Positions 14,776 through 52,336 of a stretch of 64,000 nt of DNA are shown piece after piece; position 1 is the stretch's first letter; each line of letters starts with the position of its first letter. The notes beneath the pieces were generated by a model. That model worked only from the letters and a program-made list of their open reading frames with translations. It was not told the origin of the DNA and ran no database searches. Origin of the DNA: Macrostomum lignano (lineage: Eukaryota); the NCBI GenBank assembly GCA_002269645.1, contig NIVC01002892.1, positions 62,001-126,000 of the forward strand. The letters run 5' to 3'. The position numbers and the translations under genes were made by a program.

Positions 14776-14778
14776 CCT

Positions 14779-26705: not shown

Positions 26706-26897
26706 CCTAGCTTAGCTCTTGAAAGTACTTTAGTTAGCCTTCCATTCCACTGTACATTTGTTTTTATCTCTACCCCACCCCTAGTCTTATCTTGCAGTCG
26801 CCCCACCCCTCTCAGCGAGCGCACTTTGTGTGCCTCCTGACTCATTAGTTAGTTGTAGTTTAGGTTTAGTTTGAGTGTACCCAAATAATCACGCCAT

Positions 26898-29602
26898 ATG
26901 GCTGCAAATCGCGCCAGCGCTAAAAAGATGGACTGCCGGCCCTCTCTCGAGCACCGGTATCGTCCGAACGAAGCCTACGGTCGCCAGCTTCTTGGACTGA
27001 CGCCGACAGCTGAGCCATCGACTGCGAGCCCGCCGCCAGCAGGCCTGATGCGAGCTCGACGCAGTCTGGAAGGCCGCCACTCGATCAGCCCACCGGCCGG
27101 CGAGCTCTTGCGCAACGCAGAGGAGATCCTGCGAGAGAATGAGCAGCTGCCGGAGGCTGCAGGCGCAGAGGCAGAGCAGCGCATGTCTCTCGACTGCGAC
27201 GAGCCAGGCCAGACAAGCGCCCTGCCATCCAACGAGGCCGCAGCAACCACCGAGCCACCAACTGCCGAGTCCAGCGAGCTCAGTGCGGCAGCGGCAGCGC
27301 CGACGTCTGAGGAGCGCCAGCAATCGGCTGCAGACCAGGCCTCGACGCTGCCAAAGCCCCCTGCCGAGCAACTGGACGCTGACATCAGTCAAATCATCTT
27401 CCCTGATGAGCCTGACTTGACTGACTGTCAGCAGACGATCTACGCCAGCGACAGCACCATCATCTATGCGCCCAAGTTCCTGAGCGAGGTCGCGGACCAA
27501 GTCTACGAGCGCCTGATCACCGACCTGCTGCCTCAAGCCTTTCAGCATCGTCCGAGTGAGCAGCGCCGCGTCTACTGGATCGGCCCGTCGTACACCTACA
27601 GCGGGGTTGAGCTGAAGGAAAATCTAGACTGGCATCAGGTAATTGAAGACATTCGTGACTTCATTTACCATGATACCCAGTTCGATGTCCCGAAGTTCAA
27701 CTCCGTGTTGGTGAACTTCTACACCGAGCCGGGAGACCGGATTCCCTGGCACTCGGACGATGAGGATGAGCTCGGCGACAGGCCGACGATCGCGACCGTG
27801 TCCTTCGGCGCTGAGCGGCTGTTCATGCTGCGCCGTCGGGACGGCAACGTGACGCACCGCTTTCCAACGCTGCCAGGCTCGCTGATTCTGATGGCAGGAA
27901 ACTGCCAGAAACGCCTGCAGCACCAGGTGCCCGCCGCCCACTCTCAGAATGGCGTCCGCATCTCGCTAACATTCCGTGTCACCAAGCCGGAGCTGCGGCG
28001 CAAGCGGCTCTGCCGGATGACCCGACCTACAGCCAGCCGCTAAACGGCGGCCCATTCGGCGACGACCAAGGCGGTCGGGACGACGACCAAGGCGGCCACG
28101 ACGACGACCAGGGCGGCCGGGGCGACGACAGGCCCCAGGAGCGGCAGGCGACGGCGACGCGAGACCGCGAAGGCGATCGGGGTCGGCGCGGCCGTGGCGG
28201 CCACCAGCGAGGCAGGCGAGGAGGTCGCGGCGCGGCGTCCGGTGCGGCGGCGGCTTCGGCGGCTTCCTGGCCGGCCGGTGCGGCGGCGGCTTCGGCGACA
28301 AGCGCGCAGGCGGCTGCGGCAGCGCGGCCCTACGCGCAGGTTGCGGCGCGCCCTGCGCCGCCCAGAAGGCCCCAGGCTGCCATCCCGCCGATCGTTTTTG
28401 AGGTGCACCGGGACGCGGCCAACAAGCTGATGCAGTTCGTTGCCTGGCTGCAGACCAACTTTGCCGGCGAAGCTAGAGCCGTCAACACTGCGCCGATGGC
28501 GAATCAGCCGGCCTATCTCGTGTTCCCAGCGTCGGAGCGGGACTACAACGTCTTCCTGGGCGGCGCGCTGCGCGAGGAGAAGCTGCTCGAGCATCCCGTA
28601 AAGCGCCGTCCAGCCCGAGCCCGACCGCTGGACAACAGAACAGGGCCCGACAGAGTGCAGCAGCAGCCGGTACGCACCTTCGTCGCTACTGAGGTGCCCC
28701 TCGCATTCTCGGAGGCTGACTTCGCGACCCTGTTGCGCGGCACGCTCAAGCTGGACATTGTCAGCGTCCACAGAATCCGAGCCAGAGCGACTGGGAAGGC
28801 AACCCAGTTCGTGCGCATCTTCACAAAGTCGGCGATGACCTACGAGAAGTGCCTCCGCGATGGCATCTGCACCGACTTCTTGAAGTTCAACTGCGAGGAC
28901 AGCCGCACAGACGAGCCGGTCCGCGCTCTGCAATGCCAGCGCTGCCAGGAGTTCGGCCACCGCGCTGCTCAGTGTCGGGGGCAGCAGCGCTGCCGGATTT
29001 GCGGCGGCCAGCATTCCTGGAAGGAGTGCCAGCACGAGGGCCCAGCGGTCTGCGCCAACTGCGGCGGCTCGCACCGAACCACCAGTCGAGCCTGCACCGT
29101 CGCCAAGGCGGAGCACGACAAGGCGACCAGAGCGGCTGCTGAGGCCAAAGCCGCGGCGCGAGCTGCGGAAGCTGCGGCCGCTGCTGCCCCAGTGTCAAGT
29201 GAGACCGACGACGCCGCCGCCGACGACGACTCCGACAGCGGCTGGCTGATCCGCCGAGGCAGGCGCACGGTGCCGGTACCCGCCGCGATCCGGCCGCTTG
29301 TCATCGTGACCGATGATGCCAGGAGCGCTCCGGCGGCAGAGACCGAGTCTGATGTCAATGCGACTGCTCCGTCAGCTGATGCCGGCCAGGCGGTGCAGCT
29401 GCAGCTTAGTGACTTTATGTCGGTGGTGAGCATGCTGTTGCCCCTGATCACCCGCTCTCTGACTCAAGTGGTTGTGCAGGCCCTGTCCCGACCGCCTGGG
29501 GAGGTCCTCACTGTGGAATCAACCAGTAAAATGGTTGAGGACATTGTGCGGGCTGCACTCCAGGAAGTGCCGGGCATGGCTGGCATGACCACTGAGTCCT
29601 AG
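26898..29602 (+). CDS. ORF1 copy 1: AlkB (ALKBH2/3-like 2OG-Fe(II) dioxygenase) fused to a gag-like RRM/triple zinc-knuckle protein; 1-nt frameshift at ~28006
   Basis: AlkB at ~27459-27980: YTYSG, FNSVLVNFY, WHSD (H at 27750), QHQVP, RISLTFR. Knuckles CQRCQEFGHRAAQC, CRICGGQHSWKEC, CANCGGSHRTTSRAC. Copies 2-4 have CAAGCGAGCTC where this copy has CAAGCGGCTC. Confidence 0.9.
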
Positions 29603-29688
29603 TCTCAGGCAGCTAAACTCAAGACTTGAATTGAAACTTCAGTGCGTTAACTGTAGACTCAAACAATCAAACCACAGCCCTGAAGATT

Positions 29689-32469
29689 ATGCATTTAAAC
29701 TGCAGGGGATTCAACCCGAAAATCAGAGAGCTGACACAGTGGGTCGTCAGTCAGGAGCTAGACATTGCCCTCTTTTCTGAGACCATTCTCAAAAGTTGTC
29801 ACACTGTCCAGATTCCCGGGTACTCCATCATTCGGTATGATACCCCGCAAGTCAAACGCGGGCTTCTCCTTGCCCACTCTCCTCGCGTCAAACTCACAAA
29901 TGTGCGCTTGCAGTATGACAATGTCAACCATGAAGCCATCTCTTGCACCGTGAGCTTGTCTGACAACTCTGGTCCTGACTTCAATCTCGCTCTGGTGTAC
30001 AGGTCTCCAGCACCGTACCATCTGAACCTGAACCTACTCAAAAATCTTCTCTCTCGTAGGCGCAGTGTGCTCATGGGTGACCTCAATGCCAGACACCGCT
30101 TCCTCGGGGGTGACAGCAGCAACAACATGGCTGGCTACCAGCTGCACGACTGGCTGTCTGAGGGCCCCACCTCGCCCACCATTCTCAATCAAGCCGGTCA
30201 GTTCACCAGACTGGCCACCAAAAACGGGCTGATTTCTAGGAATGTCTTGGACCTCGCCCTGGCCACTGAGGACTTTCTCCCATTTGTGCAGAACTTTGAG
30301 GTGGGTCCTGACCTGGGCAGTGACCACTTACCTATAATCCTCACGCTCAATATTCAGTCGAAGAAATGGGCTGGTCCCCCCAGACCCAAAAACTTCTCAA
30401 AAACAAACTGGGACGAGTTCAGACTCAAAATCAGTGAAGCTTTGAGCTCAGATCAGAATATTAAATTATCAAATGCTGACCAAATCAATGCCGAAGTGGA
30501 TCACATCACAAAGGCCATTCACACCGTGATTGACTCCACAGTACCAGACTGTGGTGCCAAAAACGCCCTACCCAAGTACATCCTCGACCTGATCAAAGAG
30601 CGCAGACGACTCAGACGCCTCTTCTTCAGCACACGGGATCAAAATTTCAAAACCCAAGCAAACCAGCTCGCAAATCGCATAAAGAGAGAAATTAACTCCT
30701 TCCAGAATGGAAAGCTCACCAAAGTCTGTGAGAGTATTGTTGAAAACAGCAAGAACAAGAAAGTGAAGAATTTCTGGCATGACACTAAAAAGCTGATGGG
30801 CAAATTTAAGCCAACCTCGATCCCCAGCCTCACCCTGGGTCAAACAACTGCGCACACAGATCTGGAGAAGGCTAACCTTCTAGCCGAGACTCTGGACTCA
30901 AAGATGCGCCCAGTCCCTTCCACATGCGAACAGCTCAAACGTGAGGTGGCCGATGTGGCACAGCTCACCTCATTCTACCCCGTTCCTGAGGGAATCGAAC
31001 CCATCGAGACCCACCCACTTGATGCTGCATTCTCTGTGGCAGACACAGTGTGGGAACTGGAGCACCTCAGGCCTGATGGAGCACCCGGGCTGGACAAGAT
31101 TCCCAACTGCGTCCTCAAGCTGGGCTTAGAGGGGGTGGCAATCACGAGACTCACTAACCTCTTCAACGCCTGCTACGGTCGAGGGATTTTCCCCAGCGCC
31201 TGGAAGAAAGCTGTGGTGACAATGATCCCCAAGCCGGACAAACCGCCCGAACACCCCAACTCCTACAGACCAATCAGCCTGACCTCATGTCTGGGCAAAG
31301 TGTTTGAGAAGCTTATAGCAAAAAGACTCACCAAGCACCTTGAGGATAATAAGACCCTAGGAGATGACCAATGCGCCTACCGCAAAATTCACTCCACGTA
31401 TGACAACCTGTGCCGTCTGGCACAAGATGTCATGGTAGCAAAGTGCAAAGCTAAAAAGTCCGCTGCAGTCTTCCTGGATGCAGAGGCAGCTTTTGACTCC
31501 ACCTGGCACGACAAGATCAGGCATAGCATGCTCACCGATGGTTTTCCACCTATGCTCATGCGAATCCTGTCTGACTACCTGCGAGACAGACAGATCCAGG
31601 TTCGAATCGAGGGGGCCCTAAGCGATCCCCACACCATCCAGGCTGGCGTCCCTCAGGGAGGCATTCTGAGCCCTCTCCTGTACCTCCTCTTCGTCAGCTC
31701 AATGCCGACTCCCACCATCTCAAGCGTCAAACGCAGTCAATTCGCAGACGACATGGCCGTCTGGGCCTCAGCAGACACCTTTGCGGGGCTCCGAACATCC
31801 CTTCAAAGCTACCTCAGACGAGTCTTTGACTGGTGCGGTAAACAAGGCATTAGACTGAATGCCGGTAAAAGCAAAGCAATCGCTTTCAACTACAAACCCA
31901 CTAGGCGCATGGACTTGCGACCCAAACTGTATCTGGGGGACACTGAGGTTCCGTACTGTCAGGAGGTGAAATTCCTGGGTGTCCTCCTTGACCAGAGCCT
32001 CTGCCTGAACAAACATGTGGACAACATGGCAGATACCAGCAGAGCCATTGTAATGTCACTGTGCAGAATTGCAAAAATGACAAAGCTGAGTAGCACCACC
32101 CTCAGAATGCTGTACAGGGCATACGGAGAAAGCGCTCTCACCTACGGAGCGCCAATCCTGAGCCAAATCTGTGCGACTAACCAAATCAAATTGCAGAAAA
32201 TTCAAAACCTGGCTCTCCGTATCTGCTATGGTGTGCCATCCTACATCAGCATTGAATACCTGCACAAGCTGGCAGGTATGCCGATGCTCGCAGACAGGGT
32301 CAAGCAGCTGGGGGTGGCTTGGCTGCTCAAGATGAGGGCAGCCAAGCTCCACAGCTTCCACATTGAGCCGGAAGCCCCTCGGGCTCCGGGCCGAACCCCT
32401 GTCCTCAATGTCCTCTGGGATGCCATGAGGCGTCGGGAAAGAAACAGGGGATTCCCACCCCAGGGTTAG
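29689..32469 (+). CDS. ORF2 copy 1: APE endonuclease plus reverse transcriptase, intact, 926 aa, no RNase H
   Basis: APE: HLNCRG, FSET, GDLNARH, SDHLPI. RT: PGLDKIP, YRPISLTS, FLDAEAAFD, GVPQGGILSPLLY, FADD. Confidence 0.96.
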   Translation: MHLNCRGFNPKIRELTQWVVSQELDIALFSETILKSCHTVQIPGYSIIRYDTPQVKRGLLLAHSPRVKLTNVRLQYDNVNHEAISCTVSLSDNSGPDFNLALVYRSPAPYHLNLNLLKNLLSRRRSVLMGDLNARHRFLGGDSSNNMAGYQLHDWLSEGPTSPTILNQAGQFTRLATKNGLISRNVLDLALATEDFLPFVQNFEVGPDLGSDHLPIILTLNIQSKKWAGPPRPKNFSKTNWDEFRLKISEALSSDQNIKLSNADQINAEVDHITKAIHTVIDSTVPDCGAKNALPKYILDLIKERRRLRRLFFSTRDQNFKTQANQLANRIKREINSFQNGKLTKVCESIVENSKNKKVKNFWHDTKKLMGKFKPTSIPSLTLGQTTAHTDLEKANLLAETLDSKMRPVPSTCEQLKREVADVAQLTSFYPVPEGIEPIETHPLDAAFSVADTVWELEHLRPDGAPGLDKIPNCVLKLGLEGVAITRLTNLFNACYGRGIFPSAWKKAVVTMIPKPDKPPEHPNSYRPISLTSCLGKVFEKLIAKRLTKHLEDNKTLGDDQCAYRKIHSTYDNLCRLAQDVMVAKCKAKKSAAVFLDAEAAFDSTWHDKIRHSMLTDGFPPMLMRILSDYLRDRQIQVRIEGALSDPHTIQAGVPQGGILSPLLYLLFVSSMPTPTISSVKRSQFADDMAVWASADTFAGLRTSLQSYLRRVFDWCGKQGIRLNAGKSKAIAFNYKPTRRMDLRPKLYLGDTEVPYCQEVKFLGVLLDQSLCLNKHVDNMADTSRAIVMSLCRIAKMTKLSSTTLRMLYRAYGESALTYGAPILSQICATNQIKLQKIQNLALRICYGVPSYISIEYLHKLAGMPMLADRVKQLGVAWLLKMRAAKLHSFHIEPEAPRAPGRTPVLNVLWDAMRRRERNRGFPPQG

Positions 32470-33067
32470 GCTGGCTACCAGCCTTCCAAACCGGAAGTGA
32501 CCACGCTCTGAAACGCAACTAATAAAACTAAACTTGCTGCCTGAGACAGAGATCGGTTGATCAGTCATTAGGACTGATTAGGTAATCTCTATGTCTCCTC
32601 GCGTTTCTTTTTACAATTTTCCCAACTGTGTTTTTTACCCAACTGCTCTACAAATATCACTAATTGCTTTTTTACACCTTTACTATATTCATTCTATTTT
32701 TACAACTAAATTCAAATATGCGCTATTGCATTTTAATCTCTTTTTTTTACTTAAATGTCTTGCTTTTATTCTCAATAGGCCTTCAAATATCTAGCACGTA
32801 TTTTTTAGATGTCCTGTTTTTATTAGATCCCTTCTTTGTGCGGGATTTCCCTCCCCTCTTTTTTATCCCCAAATGCGTGCAAAATACTGCAAAATATTGA
32901 AAAATAGTTTTATATATGTATATTTTTAATTTCAATATTCGTATTAAATATTCAAATCGAAATCTTGTAAATATTTTTAATTCTTTCGATCAAATACAAA
33001 ATATAACTGCGGCAGAGTTCTTCGGAACTGACCCGCGCCGGTTTCGACGGCACCTCGTTTTAACAAC

Positions 33068-33161
33068 AAAGATTTCCGTGGAGGGATACTCTTAGGAGAA
33101 TTCTCTAGTTTTTGCAGGCCTTTCCTAGAAAGGCTTATTGAAGTTGAATAGTTTAGACTAG
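33068..33161 (+). repeat. DR2: orphan U5 3' half (94 bp) between copies 1 and 2
   Basis: Matches DR1 apart from one substitution and a 1-nt deletion at a site polymorphic among DRs. Confidence 0.93.
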
Positions 33162-33350
33162 CCTAGCTTAGCTCTTAAAGTACTTTAGTTAGCCTTCCAT
33201 TCCACTGTACATTTGTTTTTATCTCTACCCCACCCCTAGTCTTATCTTGCAGTCGCCCCACCCCTCTCAGCGAGCGCACTTTGTGTGCCTCCTGACTCAT
33301 TAGTTAGTTGTAGTTTAGTTTAGTTGAGTGCACCCAAATAATCACGCCAT

Positions 33351-36052
33351 ATGGCTGCAAATCGCGCCAGCGCTAAAAAGATGGACTGCCGGCCCTCTCT
33401 CGAGCACCGGTATCGTCCGAACGAAGCCTACGGTCGCCAGCTTCTTGGACTGACGCCGACAGCTGAGCCATTGACTGCGAGCCCGCCGCCAGCAGGCCAG
33501 ATGCGAGCTCGACGCAGTCTGGAAGGCCGCCACTCGATCAGCCCACCGGCCGGCGAGCTCTTGCGCAACGCAGAGGAGATCCTGCGAGAGAATGAGCAGC
33601 TGCCGGAGGCTGCAGGCGCAGAGGCAGAGCAGCGCATGTCTCTCGACTGCGACGAGCCAGGCCAGACAAGCGCCCTGCCATCCAACGAGGCCGCAGCAAC
33701 CACCGAGCCACCAACTGCCGAGTCCAGCGAGCTCAGTGCGGCAGCGGCAGCGCCGACGTCTGAGGAGCGCCAGCAATCGGCTGCAGACCAGGCCTCGACG
33801 CTGCCAAAGCCCCCTGCCGAGCAACTGGACGCTGACATCAGTCAAATCATCTTCCCTGATGAGCCTGACTTGACTGACTGTCAGCAGACGATCTACGCCA
33901 GCGACAGCACCATCATCTATGCGCCCAAGTTCCTGAGCGAGGTCGCGGACCAAGTCTACGAGCGCCTGATCACCGACCTGCTGCCTCTGCCTTTCAGCAT
34001 CGTCCGAGTGAGCAGCGCCGCGTCTACTGGATCGGCCCGTCGTACACCTACAGCGGGGTTGAGCTGAAGGAAAATCTAACTGGCATCAGGTAATTGAAGA
34101 CATTCGTGACTTCATTTACCATGATACCCAGTTCGATGTCCCGAAGTTCAACTCCGTGTTGGTGAACTTCTACACCGAGCCGGGAGACCGGATTCCCTGG
34201 CACTCGGACGATGAGGATGAGCTCGGCGACAGGCCGACGATCGCGACCGTGTCCTTCGGCGCTGAGCGGCTGTTCATGCTGCGCCGTCGGGACGGCAACG
34301 TGACGCACCGCTTTCCAACGCTGCCAGGCTCGCTGATTCTGATGGCAGGAAACTGCCAGAAACGCCTGCAGCACCAGGTGCCCGCCGCCCACTCTCAGAA
34401 TGGCGTCCGCATCTCGCTAACATTCCGTGTCACCAAGCCGGAGCTGCGGCGCAAGCGAGCTCTGCCGGATGACCCGACCTACAGCCAGCCGCTAAACGGC
34501 GGCCCATTCGGCGACGACCAAGGCGGTCGGGACGACGACCAAGGCGGCCACGACGACGACCAGGGCGGCCGGGGCGACGACAGGCCCCAGGAGCGGCAGG
34601 CGACGGCGACGCGAGACCGCGAAGGCGATCGGGGTCGGCGCGGCCGTGGCGGCCACCAGCGAGGCAGGCGAGGAGGTCGCGGCGCGGCGTCCGGTGCGGC
34701 GGCGGCTTCGGCGGCTTCCTGGCCGGCCGGTGCGGCGGCGGCTTCGGCGACAAGCGCGCAGGCGGCTGCGGCAGCGCGGCCCTACGCGCAGGTTGCGGCG
34801 CGCCCTGCGCCGCCCAGAAGGCCCCAGGCTGCCATCCCGCCGATCGTTTTTGAGGTGCACCGGGACGCGGCCAACAAGCTGATGCAGTTCGTTGCCTGGC
34901 TGCAGACCAACTTTGCCGGCGAAGCTAGAGCCGTCAACACTGCGCCGATGGCGAATCAGCCGGCCTATCTCGTGTTCCCAGCGTCGGAGCGGGACTACAA
35001 CGTCTTCCTGGGCGGCGCGCTGCGCGAGGAGAAGCTGCTCGAGCATCCCGTAAAGCGCCGTCCAGCCCGAGCCCGACCGCTGGACAACAGAACAGGGCCC
35101 GACAGAGTGCAGCAGCAGCCGGTACGCACCTTCGTCGCTACTGAGGTGCCCCTCGCATTCTCGGAGGCTGACTTCGCGACCCTGTTGCGCGCACGCTCAA
35201 GCTGGACATTGTCAGCGTCCACAGAATCCGAGCCAGAGCGACTGGGAAGGCAACCCAGTTCGTGCGCATCTTCACAAAGTCGGCGATGACCTACGAGAAG
35301 TGCCTCCGCGATGGCATCTGCACCGACTTCTTGAAGTTCAACTGCGAGGACAGCCGCACAGACGAGCCGGTCCGCGCTCTGCAATGCCAGCGCTGCCAGG
35401 AGTTCGGCCACCGCGCTGCCAGTGTCGGGGGCAGCAGCGCTGCCGGATTTGCGGCGGCCAGCATTCCTGGAAGGAGTGCCAGCACGAGGGCCCAGCGGTC
35501 TGCGCCAACTGCGGCGGCTCGCACCGAACCACCAGTCGAGCCTGCACCGTCGCCAAGGCGGAGCACGACAAGGCGACCAGAGCGGCTGCTGAGGCCAAAG
35601 CCGCGGCGCGAGCTGCGGAAGCTGCGGCCGCTGCTGCCCCAGTGTCAAGTGAGACCGACGACGCCGCCGCCGACGACGACTCCGACAGCGGCTGGCTGAT
35701 CCGCCGAGGCAGGCGCACGGTGCCGGTACCCGCCGCGATCCGGCCGCTTGTCATCGTGACCGATGATGCCAGGAGCGCTCCGGCGGCAGAGACCGAGTCT
35801 GATGTCAATGCGACTGCTCCGTCAGCTGATGCCGGCCAGGCGGTGCAGCTGCAGCTTAGTGACTTTATGTCGGTGGTGAGCATGCTGTTGCCCCTGATCA
35901 CCCGCTCTCTGACTCAAGTGGTTGTGCAGGCCCTGTCCCGACCGCCTGGGGAGGTCCTCACTGTGGAATCAACCAGTAAAATGGTTGAGGACATTGTGCG
36001 GGCTGCACTCCAGGAAGTGCCGGGCATGGCTGGCATGACCACTGAGTCCTAG
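33351..36052 (+). pseudogene. ORF1 copy 2 (AlkB-gag) with 1-nt deletions at ~33989, ~34078, ~35191 and ~35420
   Basis: Same motifs as copy 1, split over several ORF pieces; the shifts may be assembly errors. Confidence 0.85.
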
Positions 36053-36138
36053 TCTCAGGCAGCTAAACTCAAGACTTGAATTGAAACTTCAGTGCGTTAA
36101 CTGTAGACTCAAACAATCAAACCACAGCCCTGAAGATT

Positions 36139-38918: not shown

Positions 38919-39518
38919 GCTGGCTACCAGCCTTCCAAACCGGAAGTGACCACGCTCTGAAACGCAACTAATAAAACTAAACTTGCTGCCTGAGACAGAG
39001 ATCGGTTGATCAGTCATTAGGACTGATTAGGTAATCTCTATGTCTCCTCGCGTTTCTTTTTACAATTTTCCCAACTGTGTTTTTTACCCAACTGCTCTAC
39101 AAATATCACTAATTGCTTTTTTACACCTTTACTATATTCATTCTATTTTTACAACTAAATTCAAATATGCGCTATTGCATTTTTAATCTCTATTTTTTTA
39201 CTTAAATGTCTTGCTTTTACTCTCAATAGGCCTTCAAATATCTAGCACGTATTTTTTAGATGTCCTGTTTTTATTAGATCCCTTCTTTGTGCGGGATTTC
39301 CCTCCCCTCTTTTTTATCCCCAAATGCGTGCAAAATACTGCAAAATATTGAAAAATAGTTTTATATATGTATATTTTTAATTTCAATATTCGTATTAAAT
39401 ATTCAAATCGAAATCTTGTAAATATTTTTAATTCTTTCGATCAAATACAAAATATAACTGCGGCAGAGTTCTTCGGAACTGACCCGCGCCGGTTTCGACG
39501 GCACCTCGTTTTAACAAC

Positions 39519-42527: not shown

Positions 42528-42613
42528 TCTCAGGCAGCTAAACTCAAGACTTGAATTGAAACTTCAGTGCGTTAACTGTAGACTCAAACAATCAAACCAC
42601 AGCCCTGAAGATT

Positions 42614-45393
42614 ATGCATTTAAACTGCAGGGGATTCAACCCGAAAATCAGAGAGCTGACACAGTGGGTCGTCAGTCAGGAGCTAGACATTGCCCTCTTC
42701 TCTGAGACCATTCTCAAAAGTTGTCACACTGTCCAGATTCCCGGGTACTCCATCATTCGGTATGATACCCCGCAAGTCAAACGCGGGCTTCTCCTTGCCC
42801 ACTCTCCTCGCGTCAAACTCACAAATGTGCGCTTGCAGTATGACAATGTCAACCATGAAGCCATCTCTTGCACCGTGAGCTTGTCTGACAACTCTGGTCC
42901 TGACTTCAATCTCGCTCTGGTGTACAGGTCTCCAGCACCGTACCATCTGAACCTGAACCTACTCAAAAATCTTCTCTCCGTAGGCGCAGTGTGCTCATGG
43001 GTGACCTCAATGCCAGACACCGCTTCCTCGGGGGTGACAGCAGCAACAACATGGCTGGCTACCAGCTGCACGACTGGCTGTCTGAGGGCCCCACCTCGCC
43101 CACCATTCTCAATCAAGCCGGTCAGTTCACCAGACTGGCCACCAAAAACGGGCTGATTTCTAGGAATGTCTTGGACCTCGCCCTGGCCACTGAGGACTTT
43201 CTCCCATTTGTGCAGGACTTTGAGGTGGGTCCTGACCTGGGCAGTGACCACTTACCTATAATCCTCACGCTCAATATTCAGTCGAAGAAATGGGCTGGTC
43301 CCCCCAGACCCAAAAACTTCTCAAAAACAAACTGGGACGAGTTCAGACTCAAAATCAGTGAAGCTTTGAGCTCAGATCAGAATATTAAATTATCAAATGC
43401 TGACCAAATCAATGCCGAAGTGGATCACATCACAAAGGCCATTCACACCGTGATTGACTCCACAGTACCAGACTGTGGTGCCAAAAACGCCCTACCCAAG
43501 TACATCCTCGACCTGATCAAAGAGCGCAGACGACTCAGACGCCTCTTCTTCAGCACACGGGATCAAAATTTCAAAACCCAAGCAAACCAGCTCGCAAATC
43601 GCATAAAGAGAGAAATTAACTCCTTCCAGAATGGAAAGCTCACCAAAGTCTGTGAGAGTATTGTTGAAAACAGCAAGAACAAGAAAGTGAAGAATTTCTG
43701 GCATGACACTAAAAAGCTGATGGGCAAATTTAAGCCAACCTCGATCCCCAGCCTCACCCTGGGTCAAACAACTGCGCACACAGATCTGGAGAAGGCTAAC
43801 CTTCTAGCCGAGACTCTGGACTCAAAGATGCGCCCAGTCCCTTCCACATGCGAACAGCTCAAACGTGAGGTGGCCGATGTGGCACAGCTCACCTCATTCT
43901 ACCCCGTTCCTGAGGGAATCGAACCCATCGAGACCCACCCACTTGATGCTGCATTCTCTGTGGCAGACACAGTGTGGGAACTGGAGCACCTCAGGCCTGA
44001 TGGAGCACCCGGGCTGGACAAGATTCCCAACTGCGTCCTCAAGCTGGGCTTAGAGGGGGTGGCAATCACGAGACTCACTAACCTCTTCAACGCCTGCTAC
44101 GGTCGAGGGATTTTCCCCAGCGCCTGGAAGAAAGCTGTGGTGACAATGATCCCCAAGCCGGACAAACCGCCCGAACACCCCAACTCCTACAGACCAATCA
44201 GCCTGACCTCATGTCTGGGCAAAGTGTTTGAGAAGCTTATAGCAAAAAGACTCACCAAGCACCTTGAGGATAATAAGACCCTAGGAGATGACCAATGCGC
44301 CTACCGCAAAATTCACTCCACGTATGACAACCTGTGCCGTCTGGCACAAGATGTCATGGTAGCAAAGTGCAAAGCTAAAAAGTCCGCTGCAGTCTTCCTG
44401 GATGCAGAGGCAGCTTTTGACTCCACCTGGCACGACAAGATCAGGCATAGCATGCTCACCGATGGTTTTCCACCTATGCTCATGCGAATCCTGTCTGACT
44501 ACCTGCGAGACAGACAGATCCAGGTTCGAATCGAGGGGGCCCTAAGCGATCCCCACACCATCCAGGCTGGCGTCCCTCAGGGAGGCATTCTGAGCCCTCT
44601 CCTGTACCTCCTCTTCGTCAGCTCAATGCCGACTCCCACCATCTCAAGCGTCAAACGCAGTCAATTCGCAGACGACATGGCCGTCTGGGCCTCAGCAGAC
44701 ACCTTTGCGGGGCTCCGAACATCCCTTCAAAGCTACCTCAGACGAGTCTTTGACTGGTGCGGTAAACAAGGCATTAGACTGAATGCCGGTAAAAGCAAAG
44801 CAATCGCTTTCAACTACAAACCCACTAGGCGCATGGACTTGCGACCCAAACTGTATCTGGGGGACACTGAGGTTCCGTACTGTCAGGAGGTGAAATTCCT
44901 GGGTGTCCTCCTTGACCAGAGCCTCTGCCTGAACAAACATGTGGACAACATGGCAGATACCAGCAGAGCCATTGTAATGTCACTGTGCAGAATTGCAAAA
45001 ATGACTAAGCTGAGTAGCACCACCCTCAGAATGCTGTACAGGGCATACGGAGAAAGCGCTCTCACCTACGGAGCGCCAATCCTGAGCCAAATCTGTGCGA
45101 CTAACCAAATCAAATTGCAGAAAATTCAAAACCTGGCTCTCCGTATCTGCTATGGTGTGCCATCCTACATCAGCATTGAATACCTGCACAAGCTGGCAGG
45201 TATGCCGATGCTCGCAGACAGGGTCAAGCAGCTGGGGGTGGCTTGGCTGCTCAAGATGAGGGCAGCCAAGCTCCACAGCTTCCACATTGAGCCGGAAGCC
45301 CCTCGGGCTCCGGGCCGAACCCCTGTCCTCAATGTCCTCTGGGATGCCATGAGGCGTCGGGAAAGAAACAGGGGATTCCCACCCCAGGGTTAG
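42614..45393 (+). pseudogene. ORF2 copy 3 (APE-RT) with a 1-nt deletion at ~42978
   Basis: ORF pieces 42614-43156 and 42991-45393. Confidence 0.88.
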
Positions 45394-45995
45394 GCTGGCT
45401 ACCAGCCTTCCAAACCGGAAGTGACCACGCTCTGAAACGCAACTAATAAAACTAAACTTGCTGCCTGAGACAGAGATCGGTTGATCAGTCATTAGGACTG
45501 ATTAGGTAATCTCTATGTCTCCTCGCGTTTCTTTTTACAATTTTCCCAACTGTGTTTTTTACCCAACTGCTCTACAAATATCACTAATTGCTTTTTTACA
45601 CCTTTACTATATTCATTCTATTTTTACAACTAAATTCAAATATGCGCTATTGCATTTTTAATCTCTATTTTTTTTTACTTAAATGTCTTGCTTTTACTCT
45701 CAATAGGCCTTCAAATATCAAGCACGTATTTTTTAGATGTCCTGTTTTTATTAGATCCCTTCTTTGTGTGGGATTTCCCTCCCCTCTTTTTTATCCCCAA
45801 ATGCGTGCAAAATACTGCAAAATATTGAAAAATAGTTTTATATATGTATATTTTTAATTTCAATATTCGTATTAAATATTCAAATCGAAATCTTGTAAAT
45901 ATTTTTAATTCTTTCGATCAAATACAAAATATAACTGCGGCAGAGTTCTTCGGAACTGACCCGCGCCGGTTTCGACGGCACCTCGTTTTAACAAC

Positions 45996-46090
45996 AAAGA
46001 TTTCCGTGGAGGGATACTCTTAAGAGAATTCTCTAGTTTTTGCAGGCCTTTCCTAGAAAGGCTTATTAGAAGTTGAATAGTTTAGACTAG
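45996..46090 (+). repeat. DR4: orphan U5 3' half (95 bp)
   Basis: Direct match, with a G>A variant at 46023. Confidence 0.93.
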
Positions 46091-46173
46091 CCTAGCTTAG
46101 CTCTTAAAAGTACTTTAGTTAGCCTTCCATTCCACTGTACATTTGTTTTTATCTCTACCCCACCCCTAGTCTT

Positions 46174-48864
46174 GGACTGCCGGCCCTCTCTTGAGCACCG
46201 GTATCGTCCGAACGAAGCCTACGGTCGCCAGCTTCTTGGACTGACGCCGACAGCTGAGCCATCGACCGCGAGCCCGCCGCCAGCAGGCCAGATGCGAGCT
46301 CGACGCAGTCTGGAAGGCCGCCACTCGATCAGCCCACCGGCCGGCGAGCTCTTGCGCAACGCAGAGGAGATCCTGCGAGAGAATGAGCAGCTGCCGGAGG
46401 CTGCAGGCGCAGAGGCAGAGCAGCGCATGTCTCTCGACTGCGACGAGCCAAGCCAGACAAGCGCCCTGCCATCCAACGAGGCCGCAGCAACCACCGAGCC
46501 ACCAACTGCCGAGTCCAGCGAGCTCAGTGCGGCAGCGGCAGCGCCGACGTCTGAGGAGCGCCAGCAATCGGCTGCAGACCAGGCCTCGACGCTGCCAAAG
46601 CCCCCTGCCGAGCAACTGGACGCTGACATCAGTCAAATCATCTTCCCTGATGAGCCTGACTTGACTGACTGTCAGCAGACGATCTACGCTAGCGACAGCA
46701 CCATCATCTATGCGCCCAAGTTCCTGAGCGAGGTCGCGGACCAAGTCTACGAGCGCCTGATCACCGACCTGCTGCCTCTGGCCTTTCAGCATCGTCCGAG
46801 TGAGCAGCGCCGTGTCTACTGGATCGGCCCGTCGTACACCCACAGCGGGGTTGAGCTGAAGGAAAATCTAGACTGGCATCAGGTAATTGAAGACATTCGT
46901 GACTTCATTTACCATGATACCCAGTTCGATGTCCCGAAGTTCAACTCCGTGTTGGTGAACTTCTACACCGAGCCGGGAGACCGGATTCCCTGGCACTCGG
47001 ACGATGAGGATGAGCTCGGCGACAGGCCGACGATCGCGACCGTGTCCTTCGGCGCTGAGCGGCTGTTCATGCTGCGCCGTCGGGACGGCAACGTGACGCA
47101 CCGCTTTCCAACGCTGCCAGGCTCGCTGATTCTGATGGCAGGAAACTGCCAGAAACGCCTGCAGCACCAGGTGCCCGCCGCCCACTCTCAGAATGGCGTC
47201 CGCATCTCGCTAACATTCCGTGTCACCAAGCCGGAGCTGCGGCGCAAGCGAGCTCTGCCGGATGACCCGACCTACAGCCAGCCGCTAAACGGCGGCCCAT
47301 TCGGCGACGACCAAGGCGGTCGGGACGACGACCAAGGCGGCCACGACGACGACCAGGGCGGCCGGGGCGACGACAGGCCCCAGGAGCGGCAGGCGACGGC
47401 GACGCGAGACCGCGAAGGCGATCGGGTCGGCGCGGCCGTGGCGGCCACCAGCGAGGCAGGCGAGGAGGTCGCGGCGCGGCGTCCGGTGCGGCGGCGGCTT
47501 CGGCGGCTTCCTGGCCGGCCGGTGCGGCAGCGGCTTCGGCGACAAGCGCGCAGGCGGCTGCGGCAGCGCGGCCCTACGCGCAGGTTGCGGCGCGCCCTGC
47601 GCCGCCCAGAAGGCCCCAGGCTGCCATCCCGCCGATCGTCTTTGAGGTGCACCGGGACGCGGCCAACAAGCTGATGCAGTTCGTTGCCTGGCTGCAGACC
47701 AACTTTGCCGGCGAAGCTCGAGCCGTCAACACTGCGCCGATGGCGAATCAGCCGGCCTATCTCGTGTTCCCAGCGTCGGAGCGGGACTACAACGTCTTCC
47801 TGGGCGGCGCGCTGCGCGAGGAGAAGCTGCTCGAGCATCCCGTAAAGCGCCGTCCAGCCCGAGCCCGACCGCTGGACAACAGAACAGGGCCCGACAGAGT
47901 GCAGCAGCAGCCGGTACGCACCTTCGTCGCTACTGAGGTGCCCCTCGCATTCTCGGAGGCTGACTTCGCGACCCTGTTGCGCGACACGCTCAAGCTGGAC
48001 ATTGTCAGCGTCCACAGAATCCGAGCCAGAGCGACTGGGAAGGCAACCCAGTTCGTGCGCATCTTCACAAAGTCGGCGATGACCTACGAGAAGTGCCTCC
48101 GCGATGGCATCTGCACCGACTTCTTGAAGTTCAACTGCGAGGACAGCCGCACAGACGAGCCGGTCCGCGCTCTGCAATGCCAGCGCTGCCAGGAGTTCGG
48201 CCACCGCGCTGCCCAGTGTCGGGGGCAGCAGCGCTGCCGGATTTGCGGCGGCCAGCATTCCTGGAAGGAGTGCCAGCACGAGGGCCCAGCGGTCTGCGCC
48301 AACTGCGGCGGCTCGCACCGAACCACCAGTCGAGCCTGCACCGTCGCCAAGGCGGAGCACGACAAGGCGACCAGAGCGGCTGCTGAGGCCAAAGCCGCGG
48401 CGCGTGCTGCGGAAGCTGCGGCCACTGCCGCCCCTGAGTCAAGTGAGACCGACGACACCGCCGCCGCCGACGACTCCGACAGCGGCTGGCTGATCCGCCG
48501 AGGCAGGCGCACGGTGCCGGTACCCGCCGCGATCCGGCCGCTTGTCATCGTGACCGATGATGCCAGGAGCGCTCCGGCGGCAGAGACCGAGTCTGCAGCA
48601 GCTGCCAGCGCTGATGTCAATGCGACTGCTCCGTCAGCTGATGCCGGCCAGGCGGTGCAGCTGCAGCTTAGTGACTTTATGTCGGTGGTGAGCATGCTGT
48701 TGCCCCTGATCACCCGCTCTCTGACACAAGTGGTTGTGCAGGCCCTGTCCCGACCGCCTGGGGAGGTCCTCACTGTGGAATCAACCAGTAAAATGGTTGA
48801 GGACATTGTGCGGGCTGCACTCCAGGAAGTGCCGGGCATGGCTGGCATGACCACTGAGTCCTAG
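46174..48864 (+). pseudogene. ORF1 copy 4 (AlkB-gag), start codon deleted, 1-nt homopolymer deletion at ~47425
   Basis: ORF 46172-47674 runs unbroken from the N-terminus through the whole AlkB domain; the gag part is in 47647-48864. Confidence 0.85.
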
Positions 48865-48950
48865 TCTCAGGCAGCTAAACTCAAGACTTGAATTGAAACT
48901 TCAGTGCGTTAACTGTAGACTCAAACAATCAAACCACAGCCCTGAAGATT

Positions 48951-51732
48951 ATGCATTTAAACTGCAGAGGATTCAACCCGAAAATCAGAGAGCTGACACA
49001 GTGGGTCGTCAGTCAGGAGCTAGACATTGCCCTCTTCTCTGAGACCATTCTCAAAAGCTGTCACACTGTCCAGATTCCCGGGTACTCCATCATTCGGTAT
49101 GATACCCCGCATGTAAAACGCGGGCTGCTCCTTGCTCACTCTCCTCGCGTCAAACTCACAAATGTGCGCTTGCAGTATGACAATGTCAACCATGAAGCCA
49201 TCTCCTGCACCGTGAGCTTGTCTGACAACTCTGGTCCTGACTTCAATCTCGCTCTGGTGTACAGGTCTCCAGCACCGTACCACCTGAACCTGAACCTACT
49301 CAAAAATCTTCTCTCCCGTAGGCGCAGTGTGCTCATGGGTGACCTCAATGCTAGACACCGCTTCCTCGGGGGTGACAGCAGCAACAACATGGCTGGCTAC
49401 CAGCTGCACGACTGGCTGTCTGAGGGTCCCACTTCGCCCACCATACTCAATCAGGCCGGTCAGTTCACCAGACTGGCCACCAAAAACGGGCTGATTTCTA
49501 GGAATGTCTTGGACCTCGCCCTGGCCACTGAGGACTTTCTCCCATTTGTGCAGGACTTTGAGGTGGGTCCTGACCTGGGCAGTGACCACTTACCTATAAT
49601 CCTCACGCTCAATATTCAGTCGAAGAAATGGGCTGGTCCCCCCAGACCCAAAAACTTCTCAAAAACAAACTGGGACGAGTTCAGACTCAAAATCAGTGAA
49701 GCTTTGAGCTCAGATCAGAATATTAAATTATCAAATGCTGACCAAATCAATGCCGAAGTGGATCACATCACAAAGGCCATTCACACCGTGATTGACTCCA
49801 CAGTACCAGACTGTGGTGCCAAAAAACGCCCTACCCAAGTACATCCTCGACCTGATCAAAGAGCGCAGACGACTCAGACGCCTCTTCTTCAGCACACGGG
49901 ATCAAAATTTCAAAACCCAAGCAAACCAGCTCGCAAATCGCATAAAGAGAGAAATTAGCGCCTTCCAGAATGGAAAGCTCACCAAAGTCTGTGAGAGCAT
50001 TGTTGAAAATAGCAAGAACAAGAAAGTGAAGAATTTCTGGCACGACACTAAAAAGCTGATGGGCAAATTTAAGCCAACCTCCATCCCCAGCCTCACCCTG
50101 GGTCAAACAACTGCGCACACAGATCTGGAGAAGGCTAACCTTCTAGCCGAAACTCTGGACTCAAAGATGCGCCCAGTCCCTTCCACATGCGAACAGCTCA
50201 AACGTGAGGTGGCCGAGGTGGCACAGCTCACCTCATTCTACCCCGTTCCTGAGGGAATCGAACCCATCGAGACCCACCCACTTGATGCTGCATTCTCTGT
50301 GGCAGACACAGTGTGGGAACTGGAGCACCTCAGGCCTGATGGAGCACCCGGGCTAGACAAGATTCCCAACTGCGTCCTCAAGCTGGGCTTAGAGGGGGTG
50401 GCAATCACGAGACTCACTAACCTCTTCAACGCCTGCTACGGTCGAGGGATTTTCCCCAGCGCCTGGAAGAAAGCTGTGGTGACAATGATCCCCAAGCCGG
50501 ACAAACCGCCCGAACACCCCAACTCCTACAGACCAATCAGCCTGACCTCATGTCTGGGCAAAGTGTTTGAGAAGCTTATAGCAAAAAGACTCACCAAGCA
50601 CCTTGAGGATAATAAGACCCTAGGAGATGACCAATGCGCCTACCGCAAAATTCACTCCACGTATGACAACCTGTGCCGTCTGGCACAAGATGTCATGGTA
50701 GCAAAGTGCAAAGCTAAAAAGTCCGCTGCAGTCTTCCTGGATGCAGAGGCAGCTTTTGACTCCACCTGGCACGACAAGATCAGGCATAGCATGCTCACCG
50801 ATGGTTTTCCACCTATGCTCATGCGAATCCTGTCTGACTACCTGCGAGACAGACAGATCCAGGTTCGAATCGAGGGGGCCCTAAGCGATCCCCACACCAT
50901 CCAGGCTGGCGTCCCTCAGGGAGGCATTCTGAGCCCTCTCCTGTACCTCCTCTTCGTCAGCTCAATGCCGACTCCCACCATCTCAAGCGTCAAACGCAGT
51001 CAATTCGCAGACGACATGGCCGTCTGGGCCTCAGCAGACACCTTTGCGGGGCTCCGAACATCCCTTCAAAGCTACCTCAGACGAGTCTTTGACTGGTGCG
51101 GTAAACAAGGCATTAGACTGAATGCCGGTAAAAGCAAAGCAATCGCTTTCAACTACAAACCCACTAGGCGCATGGACTTGCGACCCAAACTGTATCTGGG
51201 GGACACTGAGGTTCCGTACTGTCAGGAGGTGAAATTCCTGGGTGTCCTCCTTGACCAGAGCCTCTGCCTGAACAAACATGTGGACAACATGGCAGATACC
51301 AGCAGAGCCATTGTAATGTCACTGTGCAGAATTGCAAAAATGACAAAGCTGAGTAGCACCACCCTCAGAATGCTGTACAGGGCATACGGAGAAAGCGCTC
51401 TCACCTACGGAGCGCCAATCCTGAGCCAAATCTGTGCGACTAACCAAATCAAATTGCAGAAAATTCAAAACCTGGCTCTCCGTATCTGCTATGGTGTGCC
51501 ATCCTACATCAGCATTGAATACCTGCACAAGCTGGCAGGTATGCCGATGCTCGCAGACAGGGTCAAGCAGCTGGGGGTGGCTTGGCTGCTCAAGATGAGG
51601 GCAGCCAAGCTCCACAGCTTCCACATTGAGCCGGAAGCCCCTCGGGCTCCGGGCCGAACCCCCGTCCTCAATGTCCTCTGGGATGCCATGAGGCGTCGGG
51701 AAAGAAACAGGGGAATCCCACCCCAGGGTTAG
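48951..51732 (+). pseudogene. ORF2 copy 4 (APE-RT) with a +1 A in a homopolymer at ~49821-49826
   Basis: A6 versus A5 in copy 1; pieces 48951-49958 and 49792-51732. Confidence 0.88.
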
Positions 51733-52336
51733 GCTGGCTACCAGCCTTCCAAACCGGAAGTGACCACGCTCTGAAACGCAACTAATAAAACTAAACTTGC
51801 TGCCTGAGACAGAGATCGGTTGATCAGTCATTAGGACTGATTAGGTAATCTCTATGTCTCCTCGCGTTTCTTTTTACAATTTACCCAACTGTGTTTTTTA
51901 CCCAACTGCTCTACAAATATCACTAATTGCTTTTTTACACCTTTACTATATTCATTCTATTTTTACAACTAAATTCAAATATGCGCTATTGCATTTTTAA
52001 TCTCTATTTTTTTTACTTAAATGTCTTGCTTTTACTCTCAATAGGCCTTCAAATATCTAGCACGTATTTTTTAGATGTCCTGTTTTTATTAGATCCCTTC
52101 TTTGTGCGGGATTCCCCTCCCCTCTTTTTTATCCCCAAATGCGTGCAAAATTCTGCAAAATATTGAAAAATAGTTTTATATATGTATATTTTTAATTTCA
52201 ATATTCGTATTAAATATTCAAATCGAAATCTTGTAAATATTTTTAATTCTTTCGATCAAATACAAAATATAACTGCGGCAGAGTTCTTCGGAACTGACCC
52301 GCGCCGGTTTCGACGGCACCTCGTTTTAACAACAAC

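What the first reader, a model, noticed from the sequence alone, without database searches (positions are those of the whole stretch)
26706..52336. Head-to-tail array of four full-length LINEs, each separated by one U5 half
The structure is DR-E-DR-E-DR-E-DR-E-DR, with units of 6457, 6451, 6477 and 6341 bp. Because each insertion recreates the target, repeated site-specific insertion would give this pattern, as for R1 arrays in rDNA. So would unequal crossover between DRs. The copies are not clones: an 18-bp indel splits copies 1-2 from 3-4, and the tail has two AAC units in copies 1-3 and three in copy 4.
Basis: partly seen in the sequence, partly recalled or inferred. Interest (0 to 1): 0.7.

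Follow-up and report, generated by a model that had tools for sequence, protein, structure and literature searches.

The report
U5 snRNA gene-targeting LINE array
A flatworm (Macrostomum lignano) jumping gene that inserts at one exact position in the U5 spliceosomal RNA gene has stacked up about four copies there. Each copy is preceded by a spare 3' part of U5, so a whole U5 gene survives upstream, and the element's first protein carries an unexpected RNA/DNA-demethylase domain.

Summary
Four head-to-tail copies of a ~6.36-kb non-LTR retrotransposon lie at 26706-52336. A 95-bp direct repeat separates them: the last 68 nt of a U5 snRNA gene plus 27 bp of its 3' flank. An intact U5 gene (26563-26678) sits upstream of copy 1.

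The window is Macrostomum lignano contig NIVC01002892.1, a PacBio/Canu/Pilon assembly.

A second, non-homologous U5 locus (L006) carries two more copies. The 3' junction is identical at every copy and falls in three different U5 variants, always (AAC)n|AAAGATTTCC just after loop 1. The element is therefore U5-site-specific.

The array is not a locus-specific clade. Copy 4 is further from copies 1-3 than the L006 copies are. Its private coding changes are 24 synonymous to 9 non-synonymous, so it diverged as a separate active lineage. At least two independent insertions occurred here.

Copies 1-3 differ by under 0.25%. Copy 2 is a mosaic with 1-bp deletions at variant sites, so their number is not secure.

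Whether the repeat is a true 95-bp target-site duplication or a co-transcribed U5 leader is unresolved.

ORF1 contains an ALKBH3-like dioxygenase domain, for which I found no published description in a LINE.

The parts
26563..26678 (+). Intact U5 snRNA gene. The 5' 48 nt are unique and the 3' 68 nt are the first repeat. The insertion point lies between 26610 and 26611, just 3' of the invariant loop 1 (CGCCTTTTACT|AAAGATTTCC).
   Evidence: Rfam RF00020, 83.8 bits, model positions 1-117. The fold shows stem-loop 1 and the 3' hairpin.
26611..26705 (+). Repeat 1 (95 bp): U5 nt 49-116 plus 27 bp of 3' flank ending in GACTAG. It carries the variants ACTTTTAGG and ATTGGAAG.
26706..33067 (+). Element copy 1 (6362 bp). 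5' UTR 26706-26897. ORF1 26898-29599, with one frameshift near 28006. ALKBH3-like domain about 27564-27977, with HxD at 27747-27764, the second His at 27915-27932 and RxxxxxR at 27957-27977. Three CCHC zinc knuckles at 28934-29095. ORF2 from the ATG at 29689 to the stop at 32469, intact: stop-free 29635-32466 (944 codons), endonuclease about 29689-30339, reverse transcriptase about 31225-31983. AT-rich 3' UTR. Tail AACAAC at 33062-33067.
33068..33161 (+). Repeat 2 (94 bp; ACTCTTAGG; ATTG-AAG).
33162..39518 (+). Element copy 2 (6357 bp). It is a mosaic of copy-1-like and copy-3-like variants. It has five 1-bp deletions, three of them at sites where copies 1 and 3 differ.
39519..39613 (+). Repeat 3 (95 bp; identical to repeat 5).
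39614..45995 (+). Element copy 3 (6382 bp). It carries the in-frame 18-bp insert at 42256-42273. The longest open stretch of ORF1 is 40332-42524 (731 aa).
45996..46090 (+). Repeat 4 (95 bp; private G>A giving TTAAGAG).
46091..52336 (+). Element copy 4 (6246 bp). It is a separate lineage with 36 private substitutions. A 138-bp deletion removes the ORF1 start. It carries the 18-bp insert at 48593-48610. Tail AACAACAAC.
52337..52431 (+). Repeat 5 (95 bp), followed at 52432 by unique flank (ATTGAAGGTGTGCC...).

Best explanation
This is a sequence-specific, two-ORF LINE of Macrostomum lignano with an APE-type endonuclease. It inserts at one position in U5 snRNA genes. Its endonuclease nicks the bottom strand just 3' of U5 loop 1, opposite CTTTTACT|AAAGATTTCC. 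Reverse transcription is primed there from an RNA that ends in a short (AAC)n tail. Every full-length copy is preceded by a 95-bp segment: the 3' 68 nt of U5 plus 27 bp of flank. Each insertion therefore leaves a complete U5 gene, and so a fresh target, upstream of itself. Later insertions into that regenerated target built the head-to-tail array, as in R1 arrays in rDNA. Copy 4 and the copy 1-3 lineage are at least two independent insertions from different active sublineages. Copies 1-3 are either very recent further insertions or local duplicates or conversions, and their count may be blurred by the assembly. My reading of the 95-bp segment is inferred, not shown. It began as a long target-site duplication, with the top strand cut about 95 bp downstream. 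Full-length RNAs made by read-through from the U5 promoter now carry it as a leader. That leader anneals to the target's U5 5' half and gives a seamless 5' junction. Copies truncated at the 5' end still show a plain long duplication. The ALKBH3-like domain in ORF1 most likely removes m1A/m3C-type methyl lesions or marks from the element's RNA or single-stranded cDNA. This too is inferred.
For: Element identity: ORF2 has Exo_endo_phos and RVT_1 domains. ORF1 has three CCHC knuckles. Site specificity: the 3' junction ...TTTTAAC(AAC)n|AAAGATTTCCGTGGAG is identical at six copies in two loci. The flanks of those loci share only a 135-bp stretch at 81% identity. The junction falls in three different U5 3' halves: type A, type B at L006 12115, and a degenerate relic at L006 about 12223. 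Joining the L006 5' half to the type-B 3' half gives a canonical U5 fold. Independent insertions: the distances are star-like, with copy 4 further from copies 1-3 than L006 copies A and B are. Private coding changes are 24 synonymous to 9 non-synonymous for copy 4 (P = 5e-9). For copy B they are 12 to 3 (P = 8e-6). The internally deleted copy A has 0 to 6. Tail length differs among copies: one, two or three AAC units. Long duplication: in the window, repeat 5 equals repeat 3 at 95 of 95 positions and is followed by unique flank. In L006, a type-B repeat of about 91-95 bp precedes a roughly 40-bp relic of the element's 3' end and a degenerate U5 3' half. Leader model: copy B has a type-A repeat on its 5' side but a type-B U5 half on its 3' side. 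B's private variants are spread evenly along it, so it is not an obvious chimera. The two U5 genes have promoters only roughly 65-70% alike by eye over the proximal ~80 bp, with a further 135-bp upstream block at 81%. Yet their 3' flanks are identical up to the element. Copies 1 and A, both next to the U5 gene, share linked variants in the repeat (ATTGGAAG) and in the first 350 bp of the element. Precedent for both modes in one element: R1 of the melanogaster group (PMC2718515).
Against: Only two loci could be read, so 'site-specific' rests on six junctions and I did not see an empty type-A site. The mismatch between type-A and type-B repeats around copy B could come from gene conversion, from ectopic exchange between arrays, or from a Canu mis-join inside a 6.4-kb repeat. 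No transcript data exist to show U5-to-element read-through. As assembled, no copy has both ORFs open. More distant relatives carrying the same ORF1 domain show no U5 sequence in their contigs (L001-L004, L007). The assembly is from noisy long reads polished with short reads (PMC5730564), so the number of near-identical copies 1-3 could be wrong.
Confidence: 0.72

Rival explanations
1. One insertion was amplified in place. A single element landed in the U5 gene with a 95-bp duplication, and unequal crossing-over between the repeats (or between elements) expanded it to four copies. The differences between copies are then later neutral mutations.
For: All four 5' junctions are identical (GACTAG|CCTAGC). 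Copies 1-3 differ by only 0.06-0.22% and copy 2 is a mosaic of copies 1 and 3. Copies 3 and 4 share the 18-bp insert and one more variant, as expected from exchange between neighbours. The megabase R1 array of D. melanogaster is thought to have expanded this way from a dimer (PMC5932611).
Against: Copy 4 is further from copies 1-3 than copies at another locus are. Its private coding changes are 73% synonymous (P = 5e-9), which neutral decay in place does not produce. The tail has three AAC units in copy 4 against two in the others.
Confidence: 0.12
2. The array is an assembly artefact. One or two real copies were mis-expanded, or reads from different loci were merged, by the long-read assembler and the short-read polisher.
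For: The assembly is PacBio/Canu polished with Pilon in a very repeat-rich, partly duplicated genome (PMC5730564). Five of nine 1-bp indels lie exactly on sites where the copies differ. Copy 2 switches between copy-1-like and copy-3-like states.
Against: Copy 4 differs from copy 3 by 47 substitutions, a 138-bp deletion and an extra AAC. The copy 3 / repeat 4 / copy 4 junction is continuous sequence with its own private variant in repeat 4. So at least two different adjacent units exist. Copies 1 and 3 differ at 14 substitution sites and by an 18-bp indel. A second contig shows the same tandem layout.
Confidence: 0.1
3. The 95-bp spacer is purely a target-site duplication made afresh at every insertion, with staggered nicks 95 bp apart. 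The type-A spacer upstream of copy B in L006 comes from later gene conversion or recombination between arrays, or from a chimeric contig.
For: In the window, both ends of the array fit a textbook duplication. In L006, a type-B spacer of similar length brackets a truncated relic. A very long duplication made by another rDNA-specific LINE (R9 of rotifers) is known to me from the literature; I did not retrieve the paper.
Against: Copy B needs an extra event. The two U5 loci have divergent promoters but identical 27-bp flanks. Repeat variants are linked to variants at the element's 5' end across loci.
Confidence: 0.35

Closest known systems
R1 elements of arthropod 28S rDNA, including their tandem arrays
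   Same: It is an APE-type, two-ORF LINE with CCHC knuckles in ORF1 and an invariant bottom-strand nick in a multicopy RNA gene. Tandem arrays have copies separated by exactly the duplicated target and are built by re-insertion into the duplication 5' of a resident copy. In melanogaster-type R1, transcripts carry upstream target sequence that anneals to give precise 5' junctions, while truncated copies show plain duplications (PMC2718515; PMC5932611).
   Different: The target is the U5 snRNA gene, not 28S. The spacer is 95 bp rather than 14 or 33 bp and is long enough to rebuild a whole functional-looking gene. ORF1 carries an ALKBH3-like domain. Membership of the R1 clade was not tested.
snRNA-gene-targeting LINEs: Keno (Tx1 group) and Utopia (restriction-like endonuclease) in U2, and an unnamed Tx1-group family listed as targeting U5
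   Same: These are LINEs specific for a conserved site in a low-copy spliceosomal RNA gene. Utopia-1_NVit is 'occasionally inserted in tandem in U2 genes' (PMC4640811). The legend of Fig. 3 in Kojima 2015 lists 'U5, U5 snRNA' among Tx1 targets (PMC4494074).
   Different: ORF2 here is short (944 codons) and has no C-terminal zinc finger. The gag-like part of ORF1 finds Jockey-type PRE_C2HC proteins, which argues against the Tx1 group but does not settle it. I could not obtain the insertion site or the name of the Repbase U5 family. No AlkB domain is reported for any of these elements.
Retroelements and viruses that carry AlkB domains (orchid Ty3/Gypsy elements; plant flexiviruses)
   Same: A 2OG-Fe(II) AlkB-type domain with intact catalytic motifs is encoded by a selfish RNA-based replicon. 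In the orchid element, demethylase activity was shown (PMC9289625).
   Different: Here the domain sits in ORF1 of a non-LTR element in an animal. It is closest to ALKBH3 (m1A/m3C on single-stranded DNA and RNA), not to the ALKBH5-like m6A erasers.

Membership tests
Non-LTR retrotransposon (LINE) with APE-type endonuclease | ORF2 has an N-terminal apurinic-like endonuclease followed by a reverse transcriptase | tested here: met
   PF03372/PF14529 at aa 19-235 and PF00078 at aa 531-783 of the 944-codon ORF2 of copy 1. The RT matches L1 ORF2p and R2 structures.
Non-LTR retrotransposon (LINE) with APE-type endonuclease | No LTRs, and a 3' end with a simple-repeat or A-rich tail joined directly to the target | tested here: met
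   All copies end in TTTTAAC(AAC)0-2 joined to AAAGATTTCC. No terminal repeats exist other than the target-derived 95 bp.
Sequence-specific LINE (R1/Tx1-like behaviour) | Independent insertions at the same nucleotide of the same target sequence | tested here: met
   Six 3' junctions in two non-homologous loci and three U5 variants, all at the same position. Only two loci were available.
Sequence-specific LINE (R1/Tx1-like behaviour) | Absence or rarity of copies outside the target | not testable with these tools
   The rest of the M. lignano genome could not be searched by DNA. Only three annotated ORF1 proteins exist, and all are at these two loci.
R1 clade or Tx1 group (phylogenetic membership) | The RT groups within the clade in a tree with reference elements | not tested
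   No reference LINE sequences were on hand. The endonuclease hits TRAS1 and L1 endonucleases equally weakly (E = 0.004 each).
R1-type tandem array formed by re-insertion | Copies separated by exactly the duplicated target, with the array at the normal insertion site | tested here: met
   95-bp spacers (94 bp for repeat 2 as assembled) with identical boundaries, and the array starts at the U5 insertion site.
R1-type tandem array formed by re-insertion | Array members derive from separate retrotransposition events | tested here: inconclusive
   Met for copy 4 against copies 1-3. Not resolvable within copies 1-3.
Target-site duplication of 95 bp | Each insertion is bracketed by two copies of its own target sequence | tested here: inconclusive
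   Met in the window (repeat 5 equals repeat 3) and plausibly at the L006 relic. Not met for L006 copy B, which has type A on the 5' side and type B on the 3' side.
U5 spliceosomal RNA (Rfam RF00020) | Full-length match above the gathering score, with loop 1 and the 3' hairpin | tested here: met
   83.8 bits in the window and 83.5 bits in L006, model positions 1-117.
AlkB-type 2OG-Fe(II) dioxygenase | HxD...H iron triad and the RxxxxxR 2-oxoglutarate motif | tested here: met
   PF13532 at E = 4e-22. Aligned to ALKBH3, WHSDDE, QHQVP and RISLTFR correspond to WHSDDE, QHRVP and RVNLTFR. Enzyme activity was not tested.

The most novel reading that the evidence does not exclude
This would be a LINE that never destroys its target. 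Full-length RNAs would be read-through transcripts from the U5 snRNA promoter, carrying the U5 3' part and its 3' flank as a leader. Each insertion into any U5 gene would then install a replacement 3' half, so the gene stays whole. It would also place the element behind a strong snRNA promoter and recreate the target for the next copy. Together with an ORF1 ALKBH3-like enzyme that cleans the element's RNA or cDNA, this would be a previously undescribed LINE lifestyle.
Probability: 0.3. Interest if true: 0.8.

Novelty: new variant of a known kind. Interest (0 to 1): 0.6.

Why it matters
Target-specific LINEs are models for how reverse transcription is primed at a target, and they are starting points for site-directed gene insertion tools. 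snRNA genes are rare targets because they are few and essential. This element shows how a LINE can live in such a target: each insertion leaves an intact gene and a new landing site. With two loci, it also gives a case where the mechanism of the second (5') junction can be inferred from sequence. An ALKBH3-like domain fused to a LINE ORF1 suggests that base methylation of LINE RNA or cDNA matters enough for the element to carry its own eraser. That idea can be tested directly in a flatworm that can be made transgenic.

Tried and rejected
- Relatives for junctions: I fetched contigs of the closest ORF2 relatives (P0001-P0004, 27-59% identity; L001-L004) and of an AlkB-ORF1 relative (P0040; L007, L008). 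None contains U5 sequence by Rfam or by pattern search. L001 is cut inside its 3' UTR. They say nothing decisive about target choice.
- 3' transduction: I considered that the repeat belongs to the element's 3' end. This is rejected, because copy B is joined directly to a different U5 half with no type-A repeat after it.
- Homeologous copy: I considered that L006 is the duplicated-genome counterpart of the window locus. This is rejected, because the flanks share only 135 bp at 81% identity.
- Chimeric copy B: I looked for clustering of its private variants and found none.
- Clade assignment through solved structures was uninformative.
- Literature: I found no paper describing a LINE ORF1 with an AlkB domain. 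One search was too broad to be useful. The name of the Tx1 family that targets U5 could not be recovered, because the figure and supplements are not held.
- The Rfam sub-threshold hits MIR8562 and mir-3140 at 25899-26119 lie on a 16-bp minisatellite and an inverted repeat. I dismissed them.
Full report
**1. What is in the sequence**

A repeat search and BLAST of one unit against the window find exactly four head-to-tail copies between 26706 and 52431. The element proper starts at 26706, 33162, 39614 and 46091 with CCTAGCTTAGCTCTT. It ends at 33067, 39518, 45995 and 52336 with ...CACCTCGTTTTAAC(AAC)n.

A 95-bp direct repeat lies between successive copies, before the first copy and after the last. 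Its positions are 26611-26705, 33068-33161, 39519-39613, 45996-46090 and 52337-52431.

Rfam finds one complete U5 snRNA at 26563-26678 (83.8 bits against a threshold of 40). The repeat is the last 68 nt of that gene, starting at AAAGATTTCC immediately 3' of the invariant loop 1. It also includes 27 bp of 3' flank ending in GACTAG. The layout is therefore: U5 5' half, then four units of repeat plus element, then a final repeat, then unique flank.

Copy 4 also lacks 138 bp that include the ORF1 start codons.

**2. What the element is**

ORF2 is open over 944 codons in copy 1 (29635-32466). It has an apurinic-type endonuclease followed by a reverse transcriptase.

ORF1 is about 900 codons (26898-29599 in copy 1). 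It ends in three CCHC zinc knuckles. Unexpectedly, it contains a 2OG-Fe(II) oxygenase domain (PF13532, E = 4e-22). That domain is closest to human ALKBH3 among solved structures (E = 2e-22). It keeps the HxD, second-His and RxxxxxR motifs.

The element is thus a two-ORF APE-type LINE with a short (AAC)n tail. I could not assign its clade. The endonuclease hits TRAS1 and L1 endonucleases equally weakly. The gag-like part of ORF1 finds Jockey-type PRE_C2HC proteins.

**3. Source and quality of the sequence**

An ORF1 fragment is identical to a protein of NCBI assembly GCA_002269645.1, contig NIVC01002892.1 (131.5 kb). The third member of its 90% cluster is named Macrostomum lignano BOX15_Mlig005735g2.

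That assembly (Mlig_3_7) was built from PacBio reads with Canu and polished with Pilon. The genome has about 15% simple and tandem repeats (PMC5730564), which explains the minisatellites that fill the window.

As assembled, each copy has one to five 1-bp indels in its ORFs. Five of the nine fall exactly where the other copies differ by a substitution, for example G/-/A/A. With about 1% of sites variable, that coincidence is not chance. It is what a consensus or polishing step produces when reads from different copies are mixed. The frameshifts are therefore probably not real.

Copy 2 switches between copy-1-like and copy-3-like variants. The number of near-identical copies 1-3 should be treated as provisional.

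**4. A second locus**

The named cluster member lies on another contig, NIVC01003829.1 (locus L006).

L006 has an intact U5 at 1123-1238 (83.5 bits). This is followed by the same 95-bp repeat and then copy A, which has two internal deletions and a single AAC. After that come a second repeat, full-length copy B with tail AACAAC, and then a different U5 3' half. I call this half type B: AAAGATTTCCGTGGAGAGGAACATTC...CCCCTTCCAAGAAGGGGTAC.

About 91-95 bp further on lies a relic of roughly 40 bp of the element's 3' end (ACCTCATTTTAACAAT). It is joined to a degenerate U5 3' half.

Outside the U5 gene and the element, L006 and the window share only 135 bp at 81% identity. The U5 promoters are clearly diverged. 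So L006 is a different U5 locus, not the duplicated-genome counterpart of this one. Joining the L006 5' half to the type-B 3' half gives a canonical U5 fold.

**5. Site specificity**

All six copies, plus the relic, are joined at the same U5 position. This holds in three different U5 3' halves and at two loci. A fixed bottom-strand nick with priming at the (AAC)n tail is the standard reading for such LINEs. The variable number of AAC units (one, two or three) fits separate priming events.

**6. Independent insertion or amplification in place**

I aligned the six copies.
- Copies 1-3 differ from one another by 0.06-0.22%.
- Copy 4 differs from copies 1-3 by 0.75-0.87%.
- L006 copies A and B differ from copies 1-3 by 0.50-0.59%.
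- Copy 4 differs from A and B by 1.06-1.16%.

The tree is star-like and the array is not a clade.

Private coding substitutions, against about 24% synonymous expected for random changes:

| Copy | Synonymous | Non-synonymous | P (vs 24% expected) | P (vs 35% expected) |
|---|---|---|---|---|
| Copy 4 | 24 | 9 | 5e-9 | 1e-5 |
| Copy B | 12 | 3 | 8e-6 | 5e-4 |
| Copy A (internally deleted) | 0 | 6 | not significant | not significant |

Copy 4 therefore separated from the copy 1-3 lineage while both were under selection as active elements. It was inserted independently.

Within copies 1-3 the data cannot separate new insertions from duplication, conversion or assembly effects. Copies 3 and 4 share the 18-bp insert and one other variant, which suggests some exchange between neighbours.

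**7. Origin of the 95-bp repeat**

Two readings remain.

- The window fits this. Repeat 5 is identical to repeat 3 and is followed by unique DNA.
- The L006 relic also fits. A type-B repeat of similar length brackets a truncated copy.

(b) A leader carried by the element.
- Copy B has a type-A repeat on its 5' side but a type-B U5 half on its 3' side. Its private variants are evenly spread, so it is not an obvious chimera.
- The two U5 genes have promoters only roughly 65-70% alike by eye, yet their 27-bp 3' flanks are identical.
- Copies 1 and A, both next to the U5 gene, share linked variants in the repeat (ATTGGAAG) and in the first 350 bp of the element.

Read-through transcription from the U5 promoter would produce such a leader. 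Annealing of its U5 part to the target's 5' half would give the seamless junction.

Stage & Eickbush (PMC2718515) describe just this dual behaviour for melanogaster-type R1. Full-length transcripts carry upstream 28S tags that anneal to the target. Truncated copies show plain duplications.

I favour a combined model: duplication at the founding locus and for truncated copies, and a leader for full-length copies. Gene conversion between arrays or a mis-join in L006 would explain the same facts, and only two loci were available.

**8. Comparison with what is known**

Tandem arrays built by re-insertion into the duplicated target are established for R1 (PMC2718515; PMC5932611). Tandem insertion is also noted for the U2-specific Utopia-1_NVit (PMC4640811). 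That paper lists only Keno and Utopia (U2), Dada-U1 and Dada-U6 as snRNA-gene-specific transposons. Kojima 2015 (PMC4494074) lists 'U5 snRNA' among the targets of Tx1-group families in a figure legend. So U5 targeting as such is not new.

Several things do appear new:
- the flatworm host;
- the 95-bp spacer that rebuilds an intact U5 gene;
- the evidence that the spacer may travel with the element;
- the ALKBH3-like domain in ORF1.

I found no publication on an AlkB domain in a LINE. An orchid Ty3/Gypsy element with an active AlkB domain is known (PMC9289625).

A full HMMER scan shows further ORF1-like proteins with the same domain. One is a second, 34%-identical family in M. lignano. Several others come from unnamed sequencing runs, and one of those lies next to an APE/RT ORF2. 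These relatives show no U5 sequence in the contigs available.

**9. Verdict**

The exact copy number and the origin of the spacer remain open. The thing itself is a new variant of a known kind, a target-specific LINE forming re-insertion arrays, with two features worth following up.

Noticed in passing
window 27564-27977 (copy 1); the same domain in copies 2-4, e.g. 40470-40883 in copy 3: ORF1 of the LINE carries an ALKBH3-like 2OG-Fe(II) dioxygenase domain with intact HxD, His and RxxxxxR motifs. It lies upstream of three CCHC knuckles. I found no published description of such a domain in a LINE. ORF1-like relatives with the same domain exist: a second family in M. lignano (UniRef A0A1I8JCX4 and A0A1I8GKP7) and several in unnamed sequencing runs (P0040-P0043, and the ORF1 of L001).
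   Followed up: partly
window alignment sites at about 27536, 28740, 28969, 30054 and 30292 (copy 1 coordinates) and their counterparts in copies 2 and 3: 1-bp deletions in one copy fall exactly on sites where the other copies differ by a substitution (patterns such as G/-/A/A). This is the signature of consensus or polishing error in near-identical repeats of a PacBio/Pilon assembly. The apparent frameshifts are probably not real.
   Followed up: partly
L006 12115-12215 and 12216-12330: Downstream of copy B lies a second U5 variant (type-B 3' half, which folds well with the shared 5' half). After it comes a relic made of about 40 bp of the element's 3' end plus a degenerate U5 3' half. This is evidence of an older, truncated insertion with a spacer of about 91-95 bp.
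   Followed up: partly
window 33045-33067 against 26587-26610: The last bases of the element (CCTCGTTTTAACAAC) resemble the U5 sequence just upstream of the nick (TCGCCTTTTACT). Each internal junction therefore recreates a near-native target context. This may allow insertion into internal repeats as well.
   Followed up: no
window 7791-9417, minus strand: A GC-rich (60%), frameshifted fragment of a different retroelement reverse transcriptase (RVT_1, E = 4e-13) is embedded between minisatellites.
   Followed up: partly
window 1-6510, 9437-10404, 11145-13697, 13842-17963, 20040-25984 and 53451-59502: More than half of the window outside the array is made of long minisatellites with 15-39-bp units, up to 6 kb long. 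Many have strong strand asymmetry in G/C. This fits the reported repeat richness of the M. lignano genome.
   Followed up: no
window 26174-26299 and 26485-26562, against L006 905-1038 and 1043-1122: The two U5 loci share a 135-bp upstream block at 81% identity and a roughly 65-70% similar (by eye) proximal region with a TATA-like motif near -30. These are candidate flatworm snRNA promoter elements.
   Followed up: no
window 25899-26119: Sub-threshold Rfam hits to MIR8562 and mir-3140 lie on the 16-bp minisatellite and an adjacent inverted repeat. They are almost certainly spurious.
   Followed up: yes
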